A stretch of 37,794 bases of DNA, from positions 1 to 37,794 of the forward strand of contig NW_021835892.1 of the NCBI RefSeq assembly GCF_006345805.1, given 5' to 3'. Positions 3,536-30,564 of this stretch are shown here, piece by piece. Within the stretch, counting starts at the first letter, position 1; each line of letters opens with the position of its first letter. The position numbers and the translations under genes were made by a program. The notes under the pieces are model-generated. The model was not told the DNA's origin. It did not search any database and saw only the letters and a list, made by a program, of their open reading frames with translations. This DNA comes from Octopus sinensis. Taxonomy: Eukaryota.

Positions 3536-3882
3536 AGAGACAGAGAGACACACGGACAGATTTGTAAGATTCATTGTGAATATATGCACACACTATTGAG
3601 TGTGTCTACATGGACACATCTAAAGTATAATTGTGCACATACATATATGCACATACACGCATAAACGCCGAAGTACTACAAAAGCATGTTCACACGGAAC
3701 ACAGATGCTTTCACCTGCGTAGACCACGTCAACTACATATTCACAAATCCCGGGAACTGTCTTAACAGAATACGTCTTATCCGTTTGTTAGCGACCGGTT
3801 TGAAGTCCATGAAGAACTTAAATAAAATTCAAAGTAAAACATATACACATATAGCTAGATAGAGACGCAGGCAGGCAGTTAT

Positions 3883-3884
3883 AA

Positions 3885-3973
<89 letters not shown>

Positions 3974-3988
3974 CAAACAGACATATGA

Positions 3989-4019
<31 letters not shown>

Positions 4020-4046
4020 TATAGATAGATAGATAGATAGATAGAC

Positions 4047-4127
<81 letters not shown>
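3883..4127. repeat. (GATA)n microsatellite at the 3' end of LINE copy 2
   Basis: Direct reading; a few GACA variants. Confidence 0.97.
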
Positions 4128-5810
4128 TGTTTCTTTATTAGCCACACAGGGCTGCACAAAGACGGGACAAATTACAAGGTAGAGCTTTTCTTTTGGGGAT
4201 AAAGAAGGGGGTTTGGTTTTCGATCAAAAGACTCGTAAAAAGAAAGAGGAAAGCAAAAAAATGGGGAGGGGAATAAAAATAAAAATAAAAATAAAAAAAT
4301 CGATCAATAGGGATCGTTATCACAGAAATGTCAATATAAAGTGTAAATAGGAGGAAAGGTGAGGTTTACCCGTGGAAAGAAAAGCCTACAGAAAAGACCA
4401 CGGTAACCTCGGTCAATGAAGTCACATGTTATATTTCTTCTTTTTTTTTGCAAATAAGCAACTCTCTGTATTAATTTTTACGGTTCATAGAATCATAGTC
4501 AAGGTGGCTTCGTCATTCATACGTGTCATCCTTGCTACATTCACCCATCTTTTTTTTAAACATTCACTAGACAAAACTTGCCTCTCTACTCTCACTCTCC
4601 TCTTCAAGTGATACTTGAAGAAGTTGATGAGAGATTGACCAGAGAGGAAAGTGTTTGTCTCCAGTCCTTTCAGACGCGTCCACCAGATACATTCTTTCGC
4701 CATAGCCACAAGTATGGTAAAAATTGCTCTTCCTTCCCGTTTGAAGGAAAGAGGGATGACGATATTAACGATAGACTCGGCTGATAAACCGACACGTCCC
4801 ACACGTGACAGCAGTCGTTTGACATAAGCCCACAGGTCGGAGATTGTTAGACACTGCACGAGTGCTGGCAGAACGGTTTCGTCGCTCTGACCGCATCTCG
4901 GGCAGGTCGGCCCCGTGTTTCTCGAGCCATGCCTATAGAGCTTATACCGAACGGTTAGCGCTTCTCGGTAGCACTGCCAGGCCAGGAATCTCTGGAAGTT
5001 GTCCATAGGTCCCGGCCCGAAGGTCGTGTCAAACAGGCGGGTCAGGTATTCCTCGTCGACGCCCAGGTTCGCTCAAAGATCCTCGTCGTACCTCCCCTCC
5101 ACTAATCCCCTATAGAATGCTTTGGTTGTGTTGAAGTCACTCAAGGTCGACCCGGGACGGCAGAGTTGCTTGAGAGCAACGCGACACTCGCGGTGCCATT
5201 CGCCCTTCCTCGGCCTCTTTTTGATCCACGACTGCAGTTCGGTCATGGCGACGAGCTGCGGGAAGGCGTGCCTCACAAACGGCGACCACACCTGTTCACC
5301 GTCGTCTACATAGAGCCGGAGATGTCGCAGTCTCAGCGCGTGTCTGCGCATCATCAACCACGGCATGCCCAGTCCTTCTTTTAACGGGTGTTGACAGCAA
5401 ACGGATGGCCTGACCATCGGGACGCATCCTTTCCACAGGAAGCGGAAGAGAATGCGTTCTAGTTTGGTGATGGTAGGGTCGGGAAAATGTACGACGGTCA
5501 GGCGGTAGTGGATGATGGACGCGATGTACGTGTTCGCCACCTCGCCCGACCTTTTAGGGACAGTTTCCTCTCGGCCCATTGCCGAGCGAGAGTGTCCACC
5601 CTACTCGTTATCTCGTTCCAGTTCTTCTCCAAACAAATCTGGCATACAACTGTAAAGCTCGTAGGGTAGACCATCCAGACCCGGCGATTTGTCCCTCGAG
5701 CATTCTGCCATCACCTCCTGCACTTCCGCCGCCGTGATGGCACCTTCGCAGCGCCCTGCCTCTCTTGTCGAGAGTCGTGGTGGGCTGTGTAGGCAGGCAC
5801 TGAAGTACAC
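4128..5810 (-). mobile_element. 5'-truncated, internally deleted copy of the same Tx1-like LINE
   Basis: Aligns to copy 1 from about 24990 to the 3' end. Lacks ~867 bp (copy-1 23947-24813), has an in-frame TGA at 5073-5075, and has AATAAA at 4134-4139 (minus). GATA arrays lie directly on both sides. Confidence 0.92.
4485..5806 (-). pseudogene. ORF2 remnant (pre-RT linker fused to post-RT and CCHC regions)
   Basis: [11 protein letters not shown] motif, then a jump to [11 protein letters not shown]-equivalent sequence. C-terminal CPRCGQSDETV and TLTMIL*. RT core absent. Confidence 0.88.
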
Positions 5811-5958
<148 letters not shown>

Positions 5959-11102: not shown

Positions 11103-11161
11103 CATACACATACATACATGTTCATATATATGTGTGTGTGAGTGGGTGGGTGTGTTGGGGT

Positions 11162-11203
<42 letters not shown>

Positions 11204-19904: not shown

Positions 19905-19958
19905 ATAGATAGACAGAGAGATAGATGCATAGTTTGATAGACAGATAGATAGATAGAC

Positions 19959-19995
<37 letters not shown>

Positions 19996-20013
19996 TATAG
20001 ATAGATAAATAGA

Positions 20014-20053
<40 letters not shown>

Positions 20054-20087
20054 TAGACAGACAGACAGATAGATCGATAGATAGATC

Positions 20088-20143
<56 letters not shown>

Positions 20144-20183
20144 TAGATAGATAGATAAATAGATAATAGATAGATAGATAGAT

Positions 20184-20243
<60 letters not shown>
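19905..20243. repeat. (GATA)n/(GACA)n microsatellite with no LINE attached (empty potential target)
   Basis: Direct reading; flanks do not match the LINE ends. Confidence 0.93.
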
Positions 20244-20735
20244 TATGGATGGATGCATGGATAAATGTGTGAGTGTATATGTATACATAGGAGAAGGCGG
20301 GAGGGAGGAGAGAGTGTTCATGTGCATATATTTATGTATGTATTACGAACGTATATTTATGTGTGTTTGTGTATGTATTCATACTTATACATATATGTGT
20401 GTATGTGCGCGCGTGTGGTGTGTGTGTATGTGTGTGTGCGTGTGTTTGTTTGCTCACGTGCTTTGTGTGTGTGCATGTATATATTGAATATGGAGGTAAA
20501 TACGTGTGCCAGTGAATATGTGTATAACTCTGTCCAGGCCTGTTTCATGTGTGTTTTGTTAGTGATTTAAATCAGAATCCTGGTCTGGTGGTGTTTATTT
20601 CTATAGAAAAATTCTGATCCGTCCAATTTCTTTGTAGCTCTGTTAGAAATTGTTCGAGAATTTAAAGTCGGCCGTGTTTCCTAAAACTTTGCGTTCTTAC
20701 CTTCTTTTGCAATAAGTGTTCATTGGTCATTGTAT

Positions 20736-21106
20736 GGAGTGGCAATGGCCTAATGATTAAGGCGGCGGACTCGCGGTCGTAGGATCGCTCTTTCGATTCC
20801 CAGATCGGGCGTTCTGAGTGTTAATTGAACGAAAACGCCGAAAGCTCGACGAGTCTCCGGCAGGGGATGGTGGCGAACCCTGCAGTACTCTTTCGCCAAA
20901 ACTTTTTTCTCACTCTCTCCTCCTATTTCTGTTGTACCCGTATTTCAAAAGGCCAGCTTCGTCACACTCTCTGAATCTCCCTGAGAACTACGTTAAAGGT
21001 ACACGTGTCTGTGGAGCGTTCAGCCACTTACACGCTAATTTCACGAACCGGCTGTTCCGTTGATTGCATCAATTGGAACCCTCGTCGTCGTAACCGACGG
21101 AGTGCC
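20736..21106 (+). mobile_element. tRNA(Arg)-like-headed SINE family D
   Basis: Head GGCAATGGCCTAATGATTAAGGCGGCGGACTCGCG...TTTCGATTCCC, tail ...TCGTCGTCGTAACCGACGGAGTGCC. Homologous to 29172-29547. Possible TSD core TCATTGGT on both sides. Confidence 0.83.
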
Positions 21107-21196
21107 GTAGTCATTGGTTATATGTTTGCTTGTAGTTTGCAATAGAACCCTATACAGCAAAATCTAAATCACTTATTATAAAAGAATTTGCTAATA

Positions 21197-21610
21197 GGCG
21201 CAATAGTGGCAGTGTGGTAAGGAGTTTGTTTCTCAGTCACATGGTTCCGGGTTCAGTCCCACTGCATGGCACCTTGCACAAGTGTTTTCTTTTATATTCC
21301 CCGGCCGACCAATGATTTCTAAGTGGATTTGGTAGACGGAAACAGAAAGAAGTCTGTCCAACATATTTGTGTATGAGTGTGAGAGTGTGTGTGCCGCGCG
21401 CGTGCGTGCGTGTGTATCTGCGTGCGTCGTTTTGTCCGCTTGACAACTGGTGTTTAAGTCTATACTTGTCCCTGAACTATGCGGTTCGGCAAAAGAGACT
21501 GATAGAATAAGTAACAGGTTTATTCATTCGACTAAAATTCGATTCATCCCACTAAAATTGCGTTAGCCGGTGATCCAGCATGGCCACAGTCTAATCCCTG
21601 AAGCCAGTCA
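21197..21610 (+). mobile_element. SINE family A, diverged
   Basis: GGCGCAATAGTGGCAGTGTGGTAAG...GGTTCAGTCCCACTGC...CGGTTCGGCAAAAGAGAC...CCAGCATGGCC. Confidence 0.82.
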
Positions 21611-22273: not shown

Positions 22274-22306
<33 letters not shown>

Positions 22307-22310
22307 TGTG

Positions 22311-22354
<44 letters not shown>

Positions 22355-22360
22355 GGATGG
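22274..22360. repeat. (GATA)n/(GA)n microsatellite at the 3' end of the full-length LINE
   Basis: Direct reading. Confidence 0.95.
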
Positions 22361-22796
22361 AGAAGAGATATGTTTCTTTATTAGCCACACAGGGCTGCAC
22401 ACAGATAGAACAAATTACAAGGTAGAGCTTTTCTTTTGAAGGTTTAAAAAAATAAAAAATTAAAAATAAAAAATAAAAATAAGAAAAAAAAAAAATAAAT
22501 AAAAAAAAATAAAAAAGGGGGGGTCGATCAAAAGGGATCGTAAAAGGAGAGAAAGAGGACAAAAAAAAAGGGGGGGTTAAAAAAAAGGGGGAGAGGAAAA
22601 AAATTGATCAATAGGGATCGTTATCACAGAAATGTCAATATGAAGTGTAAAGGGGGGGGACAGGTGAGGTTTACCCGTGGAAAGAAAAGCCTACGGAAAA
22701 GACCACGGTAACCTCGGTCAATGAAGTCACATGTTATATTTCTTTTTTTTTTTTTTTTTTTGCAAATAAGCAACTCTCTGTATTAATTTTTACGGT

Positions 22797-25700
22797 TCAT
22801 AGAATCATAGTCAAGGTGGCTTCGTCATTCATACGTGCCATCCTTGCTACATTCACCCATCTTTTTTTAAAACATTCACTAGACAAAACTTGCCTCTCTA
22901 CTCTCACTTTTTTCTTCAAGTGATACTTGAAGAAGTTGATGAGAGATTGACCAGAGAGGAAAGTGTTTGTCTCTAATCCTTTCAGACGCGTCCACCAGAT
23001 ACATTCTTTCGCCATAGCCACAAGTATGATAAAAATAGCTCTTCCTTCCCGTTTGAAGGAAGGAGGCGTGACGATATTAACGATAGACTCGGCTGATAAA
23101 CCGACACGTCCCACACGTGACAGCAGTCGTTCGACATAAGCCCACAGGTGGGAAATTGCTGGACACTGCACGATTGCGTGCAGAGCGGTTTCGTCGCTCT
23201 GCCCGCATCTCGGGCAGGTCGGCCCCGTGTTTCTCGAGCCATGCCTATAGAGCTTATCCCGAACGGGTAGCGCTTCTCGGTAGCACCGCCAGGCCAGGGA
23301 TCTCTGGAAGTTGTCCATAGGTCCCGGGCCGAAAGTCGTTTGAAACAGGCGGGTCAGGTATTCCTCGTCGACGCCCAGGTTTGCCCCGAGCTCGTCGTCG
23401 TACCTCCCCTCCACTAATCCCCTATAGAATGCTTTGGTTGTGTTGAAGTCACTCAAGGTCGACCCGGGACGGCAGAGTTGCTTGAGAGCAACGCGACACT
23501 CGCGGTGCCATTCGCCCTTCTTCGGCCTCTTTTTGATCCACGACTGTAGTTCGGTCATGGAGACGAGTTGCGGGAATGCGTGCCTCACAAACGGCGACCA
23601 CACCTGTTCACCGTCGTCTACATAGAGCCGGAGATGTCGCAGTCTCAGCGCGTGTCTGCGCATCATCAACCACGGCATGCCCAGCCCTCCTTTAACGGGT
23701 GTTGACAGCAAATGGATCGCCTGACCATCGGGACGCATCCTTCCACAAGAAGCGAAGCGGAAGAGGATGCGTTCTAGTTGGTGATGGTAGGGTCGGGACA
23801 AGGTACGACGGTCAGGCGGTAGTAGATGATGGACGCGATGTACGCGTTCACCACCTCCGCCCGACCTTTTAGGGACAGTTTCCTCTCGGCCCATTGCTGG
23901 GCGAGAGTGACCACCCTACTCGTTATCTCGTTCCAGTTCTTCTCCATTTGGAGGTCCGGACCGAACCAGACCCCGAGCAACTCAACCGGGCCGTCTGTCC
24001 AGCGTCCCACGACGGAGGTACTGGTGGACGGCATGGGTTTGCTTCTCCAGGTGCCGAGCCGCAAGCCCACTGACTTTTCCCGGTTGATTTTTGCTCCTGT
24101 CACCGCTTCGTAGTCTTTCAGTGTCTCGCCGACCCGCTCGATGTGCTCGTGGCTTGACACTATGACGGTGACGTCGTCCGCGTATGCAGACACGCTCGTC
24201 CCGCATCCTAATTCTCGCGGGATGCCCCTCAGAGTCGCCAGCTTCGCGCAGTAGTGGCTCAAGAGTCAATACGTATAGAAGCGCCGAGAGGGGGCATCCC
24301 TGACGGACCGAACGTGCAATGTCGAAGGGTCTCGATAGATGTCCATTTACGCGAATTACCGAACGGATGCCTCTGTACAAGGCAGCTATCCAGCCGCGGA
24401 AGACGGGACCGAAACCAGCCGCTCTCAGGACTGCCTCCAAGTATCGATGGTCTACCCTATCAAAGGCTTTCGATTGATCCAAGTTGATCAGGGCCCCACC
24501 CATGCCAGGTTCGTTAACTACCCTGTCTATGATGTAGCGCATCAGATGGAGGTTGTCATGGATGCTCCGGCCCGGCACGGCGCACGTTTGTGCGTCGTCG
24601 ACCAGTTTCTCCATGACAAGCGCCAACCTCTTGGCTAACACCTTTGTCAAAATTTTCAGGTCTGCATTGAGCAGAGTGATTGGCCTAAAGTTATCTATAA
24701 TGTTTCCCTTGTTTGGATCTTTCTTCAGCAGAGTTACAGCTCCTCGACTCACAAAACCGGGTATGCTCCCGTTTTGCTGCCAGTTGCAGTATACCGCTGC
24801 CAAGACGTCTCCAAACAAGTCTGGCATACAATAGTAAAATTCGTAGGGTAGACCATCCAAACCCGGTGATTTGTCCCTCGAGCATTCTGCCATCGCTTCC
24901 CGCACTTCCGCCGCCGTGATGGCACCTTCGCAGCACCCTGCCTTTCTTGTCGAGAGTCGTGGCAGGCTATGTAGGTAGGCACTGAAGTCTACCCTACGTT
25001 CTTGCCCTCCACTCGTCCCGAACAGTCGGGCAAAATGCTGCTGAAAGGCCTCACACATTTTACTTGGCTCGAGCAATTCGCGCCCCTGTTCATCTACCAG
25101 TGACCGAATGGTGGCTTTGTTGCCCTGTTGCGCCTCTGCCACCCGGGCCTCTCTCGCGGCTCCAACACCTTCGTTCCTTAGAGCACGCATCCTAGCTCTG
25201 ACAGCACATCCTTCGTGTTTGGCGTTGAAGTGTTGGTCGAGGGCCACCTCGCCGCCAAAACGTCGGATGCGATGCCGCTTCTAATTGCCTCTTCTAGCTT
25301 CTTAACTAGCTCACCCTCTACTCTATTTCTATCTATGGCTAGTGCTTTGCTGTACCTAATCGCTTCTGCTTTTACTGCTCTCTTGAGGGCAAACCACCAT
25401 TTGTTGTTGATGATGGCTCCCGTCAAAGCCCTCTTTACTAGTGTGCTAATCCGGTCTCTGAAAACTTGTCTGGACGGGAATGATGCGTTCAGTTTCCAGT
25501 ACCCAGGACCCTGTCTATGTGCCTTATCTAAGTCTAGCGTACACGTCACCAATTTGTGATCCGTGTAGCTGACTGTGTGGAATTGTGGACATCCTAAGTT
25601 ATCCTTGTCTACTGTCCTACACAGTATCCTATCTAGATACGATCTCGACGACCCACTGCGGTTGCTCCATGTCCACGTTGGTGCATTTGGGTGGTCGAGT

Positions 25701-26235
25701 CGGTACCTGTCAGACAGTTGGAATCGTCTGAGCAGGTCTCTGAGGCATTTGCATCCCCTTCTGTTTCTGTCTCTACCCACGTAGTCTACATGCGTGTCCA
25801 AGGTAGCATTCCAATCCCCCACTAAGAGTAAAGGACGAGACGTTCCCAAGAATACTTCTAGACGTCGAAAGAAATCCGCCCGACCTGTTAAGGGCGGTGC
25901 GTAGACTGATACGAGTCGAAAAGCGCACCCATTGCTGCCGTCAACATCCAGAACGATCAGTCTACCCTCCGGGTCTACGAATATCGTCTTGACTTCGAGA
26001 TCCAGGCTCTTGTGAAAAAGTACCGCGGTGCCACTACCGCCCATCCTCGGCAGACAGGGAGCGAAATAAATGTTAAACTGTCCGCCAAACATGGACTTTA
26101 GGGCCCGTGGCTCGTGGAGTCTGGTCTCACTTATGGCTATGATTCCCAAATCATGTGACTTGATGTCATTTAGGAGGTATCTTGTTTCCAAGGAGACCCC
26201 AAGCCACGCGCATTCACACAACCAATCTTGACCAT
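22797..26235 (-). pseudogene. LINE ORF2: APE endonuclease - reverse transcriptase - CCHC, frameshifted in this sequence
   Basis: MVKIGCVNARGLG start at 26235. APE motifs ISETRL, GDWNATL, SYLDRI, SYTDHKLV. RT motifs FRPITLLNADLKIL, DQSKAFDRVDH, RQGCPLS, YADD. C-terminal CPRCGQSDETALHAIVQC; ends TLTMIL*. Spread over ORF-track entries 25178-26221, 23982-25247, 23774-24262 and 22797-23894. Confidence 0.93.
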
Positions 26236-26285
26236 GATTCTATTGGGGTGTGTGCTTTAAAACACACAAATGAAAGTACAGAGAG

Positions 26286-28384
26286 TTACTTACTTGTGTC
26301 GAAAGTTTTGGCTTCCTCGTTCTTTGATGTGTCTTCGAGGAGGTTTCTATATAGTTTTTGGGACAGATATTTCTGGAAACCCCCTACAGCATTTGGGAAG
26401 AGGGCTTTGAGTTTGTGGTGTTGTGTTTGTGTGATGTGTAGTATTTTGATGTGTTTGGGTGGTGTAGTGCGTGGATGATTGCTATTTTTAAAGTCATCTT
26501 CACAAATGTTTGTGTATCCTGTGATGTACTCCATTAGTTTGGAGTCTTTTGTGTCTATCGCTGATAGCATTGTTTTTGTGGTGTTGGTGCTTGTTTTGTT
26601 GTGTATGGAGTTTTCAGGGTTCAGGTATCTCCCTGCTTTGGTTGCGATTTCTTGTTTGATTTTCTTGATCTTTTTCTTTTACCCCTGTGGCTATTTGCCA
26701 TTCTGTCGAACTTTCATCGTTAGATGAAAAGTCTGACGAATCAGCAGGGGGCAAGGGTAAAGCGTCTGGGTGTGTTTGTGCGGTTGTAGATATTGTTGTG
26801 GTGCGCGGGGAGGGTGTTGCTGGGGGGTTTGTTGTGGTTATTGTCTCTCCTACATCCTTGGTGCTTGTCTTCTTCGTTGTTATTCTTGGTGTTGGAATTG
26901 GTTTATTTGTTGTTGGTGGTGATGATTCTGTTCTTGGCGCTGGTGTTGGTGTTGTTTGGTTGGGTTGGTTTGTTCTTTGTTGTTTTTCCTGCATTTCCGC
27001 ATACAGCTTCTTGACTAGCTGTCCATATTGTGGTGTGGGCAATAATCCTGGCTTTTGTGATTTTTCCTGTGGCTGTTGTTGTTGTTGTAATTTTGCGGCA
27101 GATTTGCACTCCTTTTTGAGGTGTGCCTCACTGCCACATGTATAGCATCGTGGCCTTCTGCCCTCGACTACTACGTATAACTTGCGGCCATCCTCAAGAT
27201 GTACGTGGGTGGGGATTTTTTATGTCCTCTTGACTTATGTGGAAGAGGAACTCTATTCTCTTTCCCAGCCAGTCCTTGTTTTCCGAAACACCGATATCTA
27301 GGATGTTTATGTCCTCCTTTTCGGATGTTACGGCGGATGTAATCCACAGTGTTGTAGTCACTTGGGGGACACCACTGATAATGACTTTCGTCACCTTCTG
27401 GCCGAGGTAACTCGGTGTCAACGTTAGTTCATCAGAATGAAGGGTTATCGTTGAGAATTTCTTCGCCAACTCTTCATTCTGAAAACCACCTGTACGTGTG
27501 CGAACTTGTTCGCCCAAGTCACACAATCCTTGTATCCCCAGATGGGGCGTAAGCACTTTTCGACTTTGTCTGTGCTTGCCTTTTCTGGACTTTTTGTTTT
27601 TTTATTTGTGATTTTATATACAATTGTCTTTTTTCTCCTCATTCAGTATGTGCTGAGGTATGTGTAAGAGTATTTTCCGTTTTGATTTGTAATAAGGTTT
27701 CTGCAATCTTTAATCTGTGTGTAGTAAACGAAACTTTTGTTACCTTTTCTTTTATCGCCTCGGCGAAGTTTGTTGTTGTTTTGTTATTGTTGTTACTGTT
27801 GATGTTGATGGCAGGGGTGTGGGTTGTAGGTTTGTGGTTGCTGATTATGCAACTAGCAAGGGGTGGAAATTGCCTGCGTAATTTAGTCCTGCATTAGCGC
27901 AAATTTCGGCATTTCGTTTGCTTGTCGTCGTTATTTTTTCACTTGTTGGTGATGGAGTGAGCAGTGGTTGAAGGGAATTGTTGTTGTCGTCGTCGTCGTG
28001 TTGTTGTTGTTGTTGTGTTGTTGTTGTTATTGTCGTTCTTGGTGACGGCGGTGGTGTTAGTAGTATTAGTAGCATTGACGGCACGGTCTTTGGTGGCGGT
28101 GATGGTGATGTTGGTATTGTTATTGGTGGCGACGTCTTTAGTAGGGATAGCAGTTTTAGTAGCAGATTCTGCCATGGTGTTGTTGTCGGTGTTGGTGGTG
28201 GTGGTGGACTCACTGATGGTGTTGACGGTGCTTGGCCTTGCGACCTTTGTTTTGTATTTGTTGCTGTTGTCGATGTTGATGGTGGCGGAGTTGTCAGGTT
28301 CAGCGTAAGGTAACAGAGCATCCTGTTTTCTGCCTCTGCGTCACGGTTGACTTGCACCTCAGCCTCGTGGTGACCAGTGGCCAT
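26286..28384 (-). pseudogene. LINE ORF1 (gag-like nucleic-acid chaperone), frameshifted in this sequence
   Basis: ATG at 28384 (MATGHHEAEV...). T/P/N/Q-rich N-terminus, a central globular segment (KVTKVIISGVP...), YVVVEGRRPR followed by the knuckle CYTCGSEAHLKKEC (CX2CX4HX4C, 27106-27147), a T/P-rich linker, and a C-terminal piece ending ...KTFDTSK* at 26286. Stitched across several frames. Confidence 0.82.
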
Positions 28385-28600: not shown

Positions 28601-28630
28601 ATAGATAGATAGATAGATAGAGAGATGGAG

Positions 28631-28695
<65 letters not shown>
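28601..28695. repeat. (GATA)n microsatellite between the full-length LINE 5' end and the diverged 3' fragment
   Basis: Direct reading. Confidence 0.96.
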
Positions 28696-28696
<1 letters not shown>

Positions 28697-28960
28697 CTTT
28701 CTTTATTGGCCACACAGAGCTGAACACAGAGGGGACAAATACAAATGTAGAGCTTTTGTTTTCGAAAATTAAAAAAAGGGGGGAAATATGAAAGTAAGTA
28801 AAATTCCGATCGAAAGGGATCGGGAAAAAAAAACGACCAAAATGGATCGCTATTGTGTGGGAAGTGTGGGGGAAGAGGGGGATGTTCATGTAGAGCAGAG
28901 AACAGGGGGAGACAAGATACAAGGTGGGGAGGAAGCAAGCTAGGGAGAGGTACAGGTGTC
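28696..28960 (-). mobile_element. Diverged 3'UTR fragment of a related Tx1-like LINE subfamily, head-to-tail with the full-length copy
   Basis: Sense 3' end AAAAGCTCTAC...CAGCTCTGTGTGGCCAATAAAGAAAGT-(TATC)n matches the termini of the other two copies. Shares the CGATC-N6-GATCG hairpin. Its upstream boundary is uncertain. Confidence 0.75.
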
Positions 28961-29171: not shown

Positions 29172-29547
29172 GCACTCCGTCGGTTCCGACGACGAGGTTT
29201 CCGGTTGATGAGATCAACTGAAAAGCCTGCTCGTGAAATTAACGTGTACGTGGCTGAGCACTCCACAGACACGCGAACCCTTAACGTAGTTCTCGGGGAT
29301 ATTCAGCGTGACACAGAGAGTGACAAGGCCGGCCCTTTGAAATACAGGTACAACAGAAACAGGAAGTAAGAGTGAGAGAAAGTTGTGGTGAAAGAGTACA
29401 GCAGGGATCACCACCATCCCTGCCGGAGCCTCGTGTAGCTTTAGGTGTTTTCGTTCAATAAACACTCACAACGCCCGGTCTGGGAATCGAAACCGCGATC
29501 CTACGATCGCGAGTCCGCTGCCCTAACCAATGGGCCATTGCGCCTCC
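29172..29547 (-). mobile_element. SINE family D with target-site duplication
   Basis: Reverse-complement match to 20736-21106. 13-bp TSD with one mismatch: TGGAGGAATAATG (29156-29168) and TGGAGAAATAATG (29549-29561). Confidence 0.87.
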
Positions 29548-30564
29548 ATGGAGAAATAATGTTAGATAGTGAAAGGATACTATTTTTATTCATATAATAG
29601 TTCATGAAACTTTTATTATCAGGACATAATTACTGATATATTTAGAGATTTTGTTTCAAATGAGTTGACGTCAAGTTAAAGTTGTTGAAATTAAAGGTGC
29701 TGAAATTTTCAACTGCGACCATTCCGTCTGGTTACGGATAGTATTTAGGAAAATATTACCTGTACACCTCCTTATTTAAGACAGTAATTTGAGCTTCCAC
29801 GAAAATTTAGCTGCTATTTCTGGGATCTAGAGACCACGTTGAGAGTTTTTTGTTTAGAAGTTGTGAAAATGGGAGTCAAAATGCATAACTGCGCGATTAT
29901 CTGTAGCTCTTCCTTATCTCCTAACTTCAAAATATCTTTCCTGCTTTGTTTTCGATGTAATTAGCTGAAATACCCTTGAAGCTAGGGATTTAAAATAAAA
30001 GGAATGAAAGAAAGCAAGAAACGATAAATGAATGATTGAAAGAACGAAAGAATAAATATGGTTAATTATAGAGATAAAGGCAATTAATGAAACAAGTTGT
30101 CTAAATTGTTCACTGATAACTTCTTGAAATTCATGTTGTTTATTTTTCTATCGCCTGAAAGATGGTATGTAGCGACAGCAGTAGAACGGAGCAACAAAAC
30201 GAATAATCAGCTTCTTACCAACGAACAAATAAACACTATTAGATATGTTGAGGAATTTTTTCTTCTCGTTTGTACATCCAAACATATTGAAAATTCAGTT
30301 GCATTTGTTATCTTTCTGGCTATCATTTTCGGTTTTATAGGTCAAGATATAAGCAATATACTTCGTATACTATCCTTCTTTTGTTGGCTGGCAACAACAA
30401 TTTTATTTTAAATGTGGGATGGCTAGAAACATATATTTGTGTCCGGAGAAAAATATATGAACACACACATACTCATATACCTAGACACACACGAACATAG
30501 ACAAATATATATGCGTGTGTGTGCGTGTGTTATAATTTAGAACAAACAGTAACAGGTTGTCATG

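What the first reader, a model, noticed from the sequence alone, without database searches (positions are those of the whole stretch)
22763..26296. Long-range RNA duplex that clamps the start and stop of LINE ORF2 together across 3.4 kb
On the sense (minus) transcript two nested helices form. Helix a (20 bp): 26296-26277 (CAAGUAAGUAACUCUCUGUA, containing the ORF1 stop UAA) pairs with 22782-22763, with two G:U. Helix b (17 bp): 26243-26227 (AUAGAAUCAUGGUCAAG, containing the ORF2 AUG) pairs with 22815-22799 (CUUGACUAUGAUUCUAU, the last ORF2 codons plus the U of the UGA stop), with one G:U. Between them the 5' strand forms a local hairpin, UGUGUGUU-UUAA-AGCACACA (one G:U), giving a three-way junction. 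All four non-Watson-Crick positions are G:U in the sense RNA and would be A:C on the other strand, which is what selection on RNA rather than DNA structure predicts. The 3' arms are identical in the diverged copy 2 (4451-4470, 4487-4503). The fold loops out exactly ORF2 and juxtaposes the ORF1 stop, ORF2 AUG and ORF2 stop. Inference: a switch for ORF2 translation or re-initiation, ribosome recycling, or cis-preference (handing nascent ORF2p to its own 3' end). I do not recall this being described for a LINE, but could not search.
Basis: partly seen in the sequence, partly recalled or inferred. Interest (0 to 1): 0.9.

Follow-up and report, generated by a model that had tools for sequence, protein, structure and literature searches.

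The report
Conserved RNA clamp closing LINE ORF2
In an octopus jumping gene (a LINE retrotransposon) and its relatives, the RNA around the start of the reverse-transcriptase gene base-pairs with the RNA around its end 3.4 kb away, and the pairing has been kept by matched mutations, which gives a testable handle on how such elements control production of their key enzyme.

Summary
On the sense (minus) strand, 26296-26277 pairs with 22782-22763 (20 bp, 2 G:U), and 26243-26227 pairs with 22815-22799 (17 bp, 1 G:U). The two segments are each other's best partners in the whole element, and the pairing appears in the minimum-energy fold of the 3.7-kb RNA.

The same nested pairing occurs in ten further elements (nine more lineages) from Argonauta, a cuttlefish and unidentified eukaryotes, down to about 39% ORF2 identity. 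The arm sequences differ between families.
- Cognate 5'/3' arms beat non-cognate arms in 8 of 10 independent elements; none of 200,000 permutations did as well.
- On an alignment anchored only on protein motifs, one helix (ORF2 codons ~3-7 with the C-terminal G-x-x-L codons) keeps one register in all elements. There, 77.6% of cells pair against 60% when shuffled. Covariation is 0.52 against 0.22 shuffled and 0.10-0.17 slid. Ten of 15 pairs carry double changes.
- Three outgroup LINEs at 27-29% identity lack the pairing.

So this is a selected long-range RNA structure. A role in ORF2 translation is my preferred reading but is inferred. The G:U strand argument is weak across the clade, the local hairpin is octopus-specific, and the A-run is not the element's tail. 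I found no prior description.

The parts
26277..26296 (-). Helix a, 5' arm (CAAGUAAGUAACUCUCUGUA). It contains the ORF1 stop UAA (26288-26286) and a GUAAGU motif.
22763..22782 (-). Helix a, 3' arm (UACAGAGAGUUGCUUAUUUG), 17-36 nt after the ORF2 stop, in the 3'UTR.
   Evidence: identical in copy 2 at 4451-4470
26249..26268 (-). Local hairpin UGUGUGUU-UUAA-AGCACACA between the two 5' arms. It is specific to the octopus element.
   Evidence: no counterpart seen in relatives
26227..26243 (-). Helix b, 5' arm (AUAGAAUCAUGGUCAAG), containing the ORF2 AUG (26235-26233). Positions 26235-26221 fall in the clade-wide conserved register (u = -21..-7).
22799..22815 (-). Helix b, 3' arm (CUUGACUAUGAUUCUAU): the last five ORF2 codons plus the U of the UGA stop (22799-22797). 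The partner of the conserved register lies at 22807-22821.
   Evidence: identical in copy 2 at 4487-4503
26201..26207 (-). Inner extension, 5' arm GUGGCUU (ORF2 codons 10-12).
22816..22822 (-). Inner extension, 3' arm AAGCCAC (codons for E-A-T of the C-terminal x-x-x-L motif).
22797..26235 (-). ORF2 (APE endonuclease, reverse transcriptase, C-terminal zf-RVT). It is the loop closed by the helices and is broken by several frameshifts in this copy.
26286..28384 (-). ORF1 remnant. It has a CCHC knuckle near 27130 and a low-complexity T/P/N-rich part, and is degraded by frameshifts.
22274..22796 (-). Full 3'UTR: the arms, an internal A20 run (22743-22762), T-rich tracts, the terminal motif CCCUGUGUGGCUAAUAAAGAAA, and a (CUAU)n tail (22274-22358).
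4032..5806 (-). Copy 2. It is 5'-truncated, has an 862-bp internal deletion, is 92-94% identical to copy 1, and carries only the 3' arms.

Best explanation
This is an evolutionarily conserved long-range RNA structure in the sense transcript of a Tx1/L1-like LINE clade.

Structure (shown):
- The last codons and stop of ORF1, the short spacer, and the first ~7-12 codons of ORF2 pair in nested helices with the last ~10-20 codons of ORF2, its stop codon and the first ~40 nt of the 3'UTR.
- ORF2 is thereby closed into a loop of about 3.4 kb. The ORF1 stop, ORF2 AUG and ORF2 stop end up within about 10-20 nt of each other across the helix.

Function (inferred):
- The structure most likely gates translation of ORF2 on the bicistronic RNA. 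A ribosome finishing ORF1 must melt the outer helices. It then terminates 7-53 nt before the ORF2 AUG.
- The conserved inner helix starts about 6-10 nt downstream of that AUG in most members and includes the AUG in octopus. It is placed to hold the post-termination or scanning 40S subunit on the AUG.
- This resembles the downstream structure that assists stop/start coupling in the LINE SART1. It also resembles Kozak's downstream-hairpin effect.
- Because the other strand is the end of ORF2, a ribosome finishing ORF2, or ORF2 protein bound there, would open or lock the gate. That would couple ORF2 initiation to ORF2 completion.
- Whether the clamp activates or represses ORF2 translation is not determined.
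For: Structure, in this window:
- Helices of 20 bp and 17 bp plus a 7-bp extension.
- -58.5 kcal/mol against -20 +/- 6 for other windows; reciprocal best partners.
- z = -8.4 against shuffles.
- Present in the MFE of the 3.7-kb RNA for the octopus element, L006 and L005.

Structure, in relatives with both ORF2 ends (11 elements counting the window copy; 10 lineages once L010, 93% identical to L006, is set aside):
- Sources: two Argonauta hians families, Acanthosepion pharaonis, and six elements from unidentified eukaryotes. ORF2 identity falls to about 39%.
- The arms differ in sequence but keep the same nested topology.
- Shuffle z-scores for the first eight: -8.4, -3.2, -7.0, -7.9, -5.1, -5.5, -5.0, -1.6.
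- The cognate 5'/3' pair is best in both row and column for 8 of the 10 independent elements. None of 200,000 permutations reached the observed sum.
- The non-coding outer part alone is also cognate-specific: best in its row for 8 of 9, 0/100,000 permutations.

Covariation on a structure-independent alignment (anchored on the N-x-R-G-L and G-x-x-L protein motifs; MAFFT left it gapless):
- Register u+v = -14 has 77% of cells paired against 41 +/- 6% in 52 other registers (z = 6).
- Covariation is 0.53 against 0.15 +/- 0.05 (z = 8).
- The count of structure pairs gives 77.6% paired against 60.1 +/- 2.7 shuffled (0/500). Covariation is 0.524 against 0.220 shuffled (0/500) and 0.10-0.17 slid.
- 10 of 15 pairs, and 35 cells, carry changes on both sides.
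- L006 and L010 are 93% identical and show two compensatory double changes in outer helices: A-U to G-C and C-G to U-A.

Negative control:
- Three bicistronic LINEs at 27-29% identity have no such pairing (z = -0.1, +0.9, +1.1).

Translation reading:
- The ORF1 stop lies in or next to the 5' arm in all members and the AUG follows within 7-53 nt.
- The ORF1/ORF2 frame relation varies (0, +1, +2). This excludes frameshifting and readthrough and implies separate initiation at the ORF2 AUG.
- Precedent: SART1 ORF2 initiation depends on stop/start coupling plus a downstream RNA structure (PMC3894237).
Against: - No experiment or probing data exist, so the function is inferred only from what the helix juxtaposes.
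- L009 is weak by energy (z = -1.6; cognate not best), although it keeps a 7-bp helix in the conserved register and a 9-bp helix over both stop codons.
- L013 ranks second, not first, in its row and column.
- The MFE fold of L011 does not contain the long-range pairs.
- Strand evidence for sense RNA is only moderate: sense is more stable in 8 of 10 elements, and G:U against A.C is 8 to 4.
- In octopus the AUG is inside a 17-bp helix, which would inhibit rather than help initiation.
- The distance from the ORF1 stop to the AUG varies from 7 to 53 nt, so one fixed ribosome geometry cannot apply to all members.
- The window copy is itself defective.
Confidence: 0.5

Rival explanations
1. The same conserved RNA structure exists, but its role is RNP assembly or cis-preference. 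The composite helix next to the ORF2 stop would be the binding platform for newly released ORF2p (or ORF1p). The protein would then capture its own template and, by stabilising the helix, shut off further ORF2 initiation (autogenous repression).
For: - The ORF2 stop codon is in or beside the helix in most members, so the nascent protein is released right at the structure.
- LINE proteins of the stringent type are known to recognise RNA structures in their own transcript (PMC4176376, listed).
- The structural evidence is the same as for the best explanation.
Against: - The conserved 3'-terminal motif and the tail, where reverse transcription must start, lie about 470 nt downstream of the arms in octopus.
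- No conserved sequence motif, as opposed to pairing, was found in the arms that could serve as a protein recognition element.
- Nothing was tested.
Confidence: 0.2
2. The helix controls RNA processing rather than translation. It would mask, present or bridge a 5' splice-site-like GGUAAGU (a U1 snRNP site) at the ORF1 end and/or just after ORF2. This could regulate splicing-out of ORF2, premature polyadenylation or nuclear retention.
For: - GGUAAGU or AGGUAGGU lies in helix a in all four octopod-group elements, and the 3' arm there resembles the 5' end of U1 snRNA.
- The motif recurs at the ORF1 end and/or 16-42 nt after the ORF2 stop in L001, L006, L010 and L011. It is otherwise rare in these 6-kb elements.
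- YAG sequences sit near the ORF2 end in octopus and Argonauta.
Against: - L002 and L009 have the long-range pairing but no such motif.
- The best-supported helix (register -14) is inside coding sequence and contains no splice signal.
- No ORF2-deleted, GT..AG-bounded copy was seen in the window.
- I have no transcript data.
Confidence: 0.1
3. The structure serves the RNA as a template or a physical object. By compacting ORF2 into a closed domain it could protect the RNA, aid packaging or transport, or guide reverse transcriptase (for example template jumping across the stem).
For: - The long-range stem closes the ORF2 domain in MFE folds of three of four elements tested.
- Domain-closing stems are common in viral RNA genomes (general knowledge).
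Against: - This does not explain why the arms always coincide with the ORF1 stop, ORF2 AUG and ORF2 stop, even though spacer and C-terminal lengths vary.
- No ORF2-deleted derivatives were seen in the window.
Confidence: 0.12
4. There is no RNA function. The arms are a DNA-level inverted duplication, or a chance or compositional by-product inherited by the family.
For: - In the single octopus copy the arms look like a diverged inverted repeat whose three mismatches are all transitions.
- The G:U against A.C asymmetry is statistically weak.
Against: - Complementarity persists with different sequences in ten lineages down to about 39% protein identity.
- It is cognate-specific, with 0/200,000 permutations as good.
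- It shows double compensatory changes on a protein-anchored alignment and between 93%-identical copies.
- It is absent from outgroup LINEs.
- Retroelements replicate through RNA, and no DNA mechanism is known that would re-homogenise arms 3.4 kb apart.
Confidence: 0.03

Closest known systems
SART1 (Bombyx telomeric LINE) UAAUG stop/start translational coupling with a downstream RNA structure (Kojima et al. 2005, as summarised in PMC3894237)
   Same: - A bicistronic LINE RNA.
- ORF2 is initiated separately, close to the ORF1 stop.
- An RNA structure just downstream of the junction affects ORF2 initiation.
   Different: - SART1 has overlapping stop/start codons and a local structure.
- Here the stop and AUG are 7-53 nt apart.
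- Here the structure is formed with the far end of ORF2, about 3.4 kb away.
- No functional data exist here.
Human L1 ORF2 unconventional termination/reinitiation (Alisch et al. 2006; my own knowledge)
   Same: - ORF2 translation depends on a ribosome that has translated the upstream ORF.
- ORF2p is made in very small amounts.
   Different: - In human L1 no specific inter-ORF sequence or structure is required.
- Here a structure at the junction is conserved by covariation.
Long-distance RNA-RNA interactions that control recoding or translation in plus-strand RNA plant viruses (Tombusviridae/Luteoviridae readthrough and frameshift elements, 3'CITE-5'UTR pairing; reviewed in PMC3542737 and PMC8708638)
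   Same: - Kilobase-range base pairing between a site next to a stop codon or ORF junction and a distal 3' element.
- Maintained by covariation.
   Different: - Those elements stimulate readthrough or frameshifting, or deliver initiation factors.
- Here the ORF1/ORF2 frame relation is not conserved and ORF2 has its own AUG.
- The host here is a cellular retrotransposon, not a virus.
Phage MS2/Qbeta long-distance pairing (the Min Jou interaction) that hides the replicase start until the coat gene is translated (my own knowledge)
   Same: - The start site of the polymerase gene is sequestered by pairing with a distant coding segment.
- Translating ribosomes open it.
- The result is translational coupling and low polymerase output.
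   Different: - That system is prokaryotic and Shine-Dalgarno based.
- The partner there lies in the upstream gene.
- Here the partner is the 3' end of the regulated gene itself.
Flavivirus genome cyclisation sequences (5'-3' CS/UAR; my own knowledge)
   Same: Complementary 5' and 3' elements, partly inside coding sequence, close a multi-kilobase loop.
   Different: - Those sequences serve polymerase recruitment for replication.
- They join the true genome ends, not the boundaries of an internal ORF.

Membership tests
Tx1/L1-type LINE (non-LTR retrotransposon) | ORF2 with an APE endonuclease, a reverse transcriptase and a C-terminal CCHC zinc-binding domain | tested here: met
   Pfam hits: PF03372 (1.8e-16), PF00078 (1.4e-21) and PF13966 zf-RVT (3.6e-8) on the three ORF2 fragments. 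The same architecture is found in intact relatives.
Tx1/L1-type LINE (non-LTR retrotransposon) | ORF1 with CCHC zinc knuckle(s) | tested here: inconclusive
   A CYTCGSEAHLKKEC motif is readable near 27130. In intact relatives PF00098 scores 16.8-19.4 bits, below the 20.8 cut-off.
Tx1 clade specifically | Target-sequence preference (snRNA or rRNA genes, other transposons, microsatellites; PMC4494074) | tested here: inconclusive
   Both octopus copies and a solo 3' tail are bounded on both sides by (CTAT)n. With only three insertions, a tail-derived repeat cannot be separated from a target.
Tx1 clade specifically | Phylogenetic placement of the RT with reference Tx1 elements | not tested
   No reference Tx1/L1 sequences were available in the tools. 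The clade name is therefore provisional.
Stop/start (UAAUG-type) termination-reinitiation as in SART1, influenza B M2 and hypovirus | Overlapping or abutting stop and start codons | tested here: not met
   The first base of the ORF1 stop lies 8-53 nt before the ORF2 AUG, at -53, -50, -49, -12, -10, -20, -10, -8 and -18.
Stop/start (UAAUG-type) termination-reinitiation as in SART1, influenza B M2 and hypovirus | RNA structure close to the junction that influences reinitiation | tested here: inconclusive
   A conserved helix lies 6-10 nt after the AUG or includes it. Its effect on reinitiation was not testable.
Calicivirus-type TURBS reinitiation | Upstream motif complementary to 18S rRNA helix 26 | not tested
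   No 18S sequence of the hosts was in hand. By eye there is no UGGGA core in the conserved ORF1 C-terminal coding region.
Programmed frameshift or readthrough with a long-range stimulator (Luteoviridae/Tombusviridae type) | A fixed frame relation between the two ORFs, with no independent start needed | tested here: not met
   The frame of ORF2 relative to ORF1 is 0, +1 or +2 in different members. L011 has two in-frame stops. Every ORF2 begins with AUG.
Conserved structured RNA (covariation-supported helix) | Compensatory changes at homologous alignment columns, above shuffled and slid controls | tested here: met
   covariation is 0.524 against 0.220 shuffled (0/500) and 0.10-0.17 slid, and 10 of 15 pairs carry double changes. 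Searches give z = 8 over 52 registers.
Any curated Rfam family | A match at the gathering score | tested here: not met
   No matches in the window or in L006, L008, L009 and L011.

The most novel reading that the evidence does not exclude
A whole clade of Tx1/L1-like LINEs, found in octopods, a cuttlefish and other still unidentified animals, carries an ancient long-range RNA switch. It physically joins the ORF1 stop, ORF2 start and ORF2 stop. Through it, ORF1 termination, ORF2 (re)initiation and ORF2 completion, or ORF2p binding, are coupled on one RNA molecule. That would give a structural mechanism for two long-standing puzzles of LINE biology: how ORF2 is translated at very low stoichiometry from a bicistronic mRNA, and why the protein acts preferentially on its own template. 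The constraint is strong enough to shape the amino-acid sequences of both ends of ORF2p.
Probability: 0.4. Interest if true: 0.9.

Novelty: new variant of a known kind. Interest (0 to 1): 0.8.

Why it matters
How LINEs translate ORF2 from a bicistronic RNA, and why ORF2p is so scarce and acts on its own template, are open questions. For most LINE clades no cis-element at the ORF1/ORF2 junction is known.

This finding supplies a defined element of about 40-80 bp, supported by covariation, located exactly at that junction. It can be tested directly with disrupting and compensatory mutations, because intact and apparently young copies exist (L006, L009, L011).

It also shows an RNA-structure constraint acting on both termini of a retrotransposon protein. 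And it extends kilobase-range RNA-RNA regulation, well known in RNA viruses and phages, to a cellular retroelement.

Tried and rejected
1. G:U against A.C as proof of sense-RNA selection. With strand-symmetric scoring across the clade it is only 8 to 4, and sense is more stable than antisense in 8 of 10 elements against a background bias of -3 +/- 7 kcal/mol. I kept this as weak support only.
2. Frameshift or readthrough stimulator. Rejected because the ORF1/ORF2 frame relation varies.
3. ORF2 as an intron bridged by the helix. GURAGU and YAG motifs fit in the octopod group, but they are absent in L002 and L009, and no spliced copy was seen. Kept as a minor rival.
4. A20 as the poly(A) tail. 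Rejected because homology continues about 470 nt further to AAUAAA plus (CUAU)n.
5. Three-way junction as a conserved feature. It was not seen in relatives.
6. Rfam scan of the window and four loci: no hits.
7. L004 carries only a 3'-truncated element and was unusable. P0011 (Octopus bimaculoides) could not be located.
8. RNAduplex on wide 130 x 150-nt windows is noisy, giving z of only about -3 within elements. I replaced it with the cognate/non-cognate test and the register test.
9. Eight literature searches found no description of this structure. Subscription-only literature is not covered.

Full report
**1. The observation**

The sense strand of the element is the minus strand. Reading directly:
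- 26296-26277 (CAAGUAAGUAACUCUCUGUA, with the ORF1 stop UAA at 26288-26286) pairs over 20 bp, 2 of them G:U, with 22782-22763.
- 26243-26227 (AUAGAAUCAUGGUCAAG, with the ORF2 AUG at 26235-26233) pairs over 17 bp, 1 of them G:U, with 22815-22799. The last of these bases is the U of the ORF2 stop UGA (22799-22797).
- The hairpin UGUGUGUU-UUAA-AGCACACA lies at 26268-26249.

Cofolding the two segments reproduces exactly this three-way arrangement. RNAduplex gives -58.5 kcal/mol against -20 +/- 6 for all other windows of the 6.3-kb element, and each segment is the other's best partner. With wider 130-nt windows the duplex is -72.7 kcal/mol. Against 300 dinucleotide shuffles that gives z = -8.4. A further 7-bp helix (26207-26201 with 22822-22816) continues the pairing into ORF2. 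All of these pairs appear in the minimum-energy fold of the whole 3707-nt RNA. The 3' arms are identical in copy 2.

**2. What the element is**

ORF2 carries an APE endonuclease, a reverse transcriptase and a C-terminal zf-RVT domain. This copy has several frameshifts, and its ORF1 is degraded.

The A20 run right after helix a is not the tail. Homology with copy 2, and with a solo 3' tail at 28601-28777, continues to about 22274. There the element ends in ...CCCUGUGUGGCUAAUAAAGAAA followed by (CUAU)n. The 3' arms therefore sit at the beginning of a 3'UTR of about 470 nt.

All three insertions are bounded by (CTAT)n. This fits the microsatellite-targeting habit of Tx1-clade LINEs (PMC4494074). 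Clade membership was not tested phylogenetically.

**3. Relatives**

Protein searches and contig look-ups gave ten further elements with both ORF2 ends. With the window copy that makes eleven elements, or ten independent lineages once L010 (93% identical to L006) is set aside.
- Two families come from Argonauta hians (L001, L005).
- One comes from the cuttlefish Acanthosepion pharaonis (L013).
- L002, L003, L006/L007, L008, L009, L010 and L011/L012 come from unidentified eukaryotic DNA in ENA assemblies.
- They form an octopod group, a group G1 (which includes the cuttlefish element) and a group G2. ORF2 identity to the octopus element falls to about 39%.

In every one, the region from about 60 nt before to 20 nt after the ORF2 AUG can pair in nested order with the region from about 35-60 nt before to 45 nt after the ORF2 stop. 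The arm sequences are different in each family.

In most members the ORF2 stop codon itself lies in or beside a helix formed with the few nucleotides just upstream of the AUG (L002, L003, L005, L008, L009). The ORF1 stop lies in or next to the 5' arm in all members.

**4. Statistics**

*(a) Within each element.* The junction segment's best or near-best partner is the ORF2-end window. Shuffle z-scores for the first eight elements are -8.4, -3.2, -7.0, -7.9, -5.1, -5.5, -5.0 and -1.6. For L011 the top three windows of the scan are at the ORF2 end.

*(b) Cognate against non-cognate.* With ten independent elements, the cognate 5'/3' pair is best in both row and column for eight. L013 ranks second and L009 is weak. 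None of 200,000 random permutations reached the observed sum. I then repeated the test on the non-coding outer part alone. That part is the 5' segment strictly upstream of the AUG and the 3' segment beyond the inner arm. The cognate pair is still best in its row for 8 of 9, with 0/100,000 permutations as good.

*(c) Column-wise covariation on an alignment that owes nothing to the structure.* I anchored the 5' block on the N codon of the conserved N-x-R-G-L motif. I anchored the 3' block on the L codon of the conserved C-terminal G-x-x-L motif, both without gaps. A helix with u+v = -14 (u = -21..-7) stands out:
- 77% of cells pair, against 41 +/- 6% in 52 other registers (z = 6).
- Covariation is 0.53, against 0.15 +/- 0.05 (z = 8).

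MAFFT left the same blocks gapless (A2). On that alignment count of structure pairs gives:
- 77.6% paired against 60.1 +/- 2.7 shuffled (0/500);
- covariation 0.524 against 0.220 +/- 0.035 shuffled (0/500) and 0.10-0.17 for slides of +/-1 to 3;
- 10 of 15 pairs, and 35 cells, with changes on both sides. Column 15/73, for example, is AU:3, GC:3, UA:3.

The octopus helix b is the outward continuation of this same register. The constraint reaches the protein. The N-terminal residues (RLA, KLV, NIA, SVG...) and the C-terminal residues (ANL, TTL, AML, PTL...) change together as reverse complements.

*(d) Fine scale.* L006 and L010 are 93% identical. They differ by two compensatory double substitutions in the outer helices (UCCAG/CUGGA to UCCGG/CCGGA; ACCC/GGGU to ACUC/GAGU) and by one disruptive change.

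*(e) Negative control.* Three intact bicistronic LINEs at 27-29% identity (L014, L016, L021, from the metagenome scan) show nothing, with z = -0.1, +0.9 and +1.1.

*(f) Whole-RNA folds.* The MFE of the roughly 3.7-kb RNA contains the long-range stem in the octopus element (48 pairs), L006 (54) and L005 (81), but not in L011.

**5. What it is**

This is a selected long-range RNA structure. A DNA-level inverted duplication, or chance, cannot explain sequence-divergent, cognate-specific, compensated pairing across ten lineages.

Strand evidence for the sense RNA is moderate. Sense is more stable than antisense in 8 of 10 elements, with a mean difference of -8.1 against a background of -3.0 +/- 7.0 kcal/mol. 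G:U against A.C is 8 to 4. The sense RNA is both the mRNA and the replication template.

**6. How it most likely works (inferred)**

The frame relation between ORF1 and ORF2 varies (0, +1, +2), and each ORF2 has its own AUG 7-53 nt after the ORF1 stop. Frameshifting and readthrough are therefore excluded, and separate (re)initiation is implied.
- A ribosome completing ORF1 must unwind the outer helices.
- The conserved inner helix starts 6-10 nt after the AUG in most members, and includes the AUG in octopus and Argonauta L001.
- That position suits a downstream structure that holds a scanning or post-termination 40S subunit on the start codon. SART1 offers a precedent (PMC3894237), as does Kozak's downstream-hairpin effect (my own knowledge).
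- Because the partner strand is the end of ORF2, ribosomes finishing ORF2, or ORF2p released there, would open or lock the gate.

I give about 0.5 to translational gating, with its sign undetermined. I give about 0.2 to an ORF2p/ORF1p binding platform (cis-preference or autogenous control), 0.12 to a template or packaging role, 0.1 to control of RNA processing, and 0.03 to no function. That a conserved RNA structure exists at all I put at about 0.9.

**7. Comparison with what is known**

The structure works like long-distance RNA interactions in plus-strand RNA viruses and in phage MS2, and like the SART1 junction structure. It is not a member of any of these.
- There are no overlapping stop/start codons.
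- There is no fixed frame relation.
- There is no Rfam match.

Eight full-text searches found no description of such a helix in any LINE. Subscription-only literature cannot be excluded.

**8. Verdict**

The functional reading remains a hypothesis.

Points to correct are the position of the true 3' end, the weakness of the G:U argument across the clade, and the octopus-specific nature of the hairpin.

I class it as a new variant of a known kind, namely a long-range RNA regulatory helix, here in a cellular retrotransposon. Interest: 0.8.

Noticed in passing
window 22274-22796 (minus strand); L001 ~11150-11200; L003 3840-3877: The A20 run (22743-22762) is internal. The true 3' end is a conserved motif CCYUGUGGCYAAUAAAGAAA followed by a microsatellite tail: (CUAU)n in octopus and (AUU)n-like in Argonauta. 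The motif is shared across octopod families and is a likely RT recognition or polyadenylation site.
   Followed up: partly
window 3881-4127, 5811-5958, 22274-22358, 28601-28695 (also 19905-20243): Both LINE copies and a solo 3' tail (28601-28777) are flanked on both sides by (ATAG)n, which is (CTAT)n on the sense strand. This suggests microsatellite-targeted insertion like the Tx1-clade Kibi/Koshi elements, or tail-to-head stacking of elements.
   Followed up: partly
window 26290-26295; L001 7463-7469 and 10983-10989; L005 ~4567; L006 and L010 at stop+42; L011 at AUG-14 and stop+16: A consensus 5' splice-site-like motif (GGUAAGU or AGGUAGGU) recurs at the ORF1 end and/or 16-42 nt after the ORF2 stop in most relatives, yet is rare elsewhere in the elements. 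In the octopod group it sits inside helix a, whose 3' arm then resembles the 5' end of U1 snRNA. This is unexplained.
   Followed up: partly
window 4032-5806: Copy 2 is 5'-truncated (it starts at the equivalent of 24988). It carries an 862-bp internal deletion joining the equivalents of 24808 and 23946.
   Followed up: yes
L006/L007 (period ~6.6 kb) and L011/L012 (period ~6.82 kb, A18 between copies at L011 5529-5546): Intact relatives with complete ORF1 and ORF2 occur as head-to-tail tandem arrays of identical or near-identical copies in one ENA assembly (ERZ21867824). They look recently active. No Rfam-type target gene lies between copies.
   Followed up: partly
window 20734-21105 and 29172-29549; 21194-21513 and at least 5 other places: A 380-bp inverted repeat pair (83% identical) brackets the LINE locus. 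A dispersed repeat of about 320 bp (71-74% identical) has copies at about 6219, 8075, 12700, 18090 and 33913. These are probably SINE- or MITE-like elements.
   Followed up: no
ORF1 C-termini of L002, L006, L008, L009, L010, L011: ORF1 ends with a conserved peptide (A-V-G-V/I-L-T/D-P-x-M/D-F) just before the stop. Part of the 5' arm is therefore under double constraint, from both protein and RNA.
   Followed up: no
L014, L016, L021 (JGI/ENA metagenome contigs): Intact bicistronic LINEs at 27-29% ORF2 identity lack the junction/ORF2-end pairing. They mark an outer boundary of the clade that has it.
   Followed up: yes
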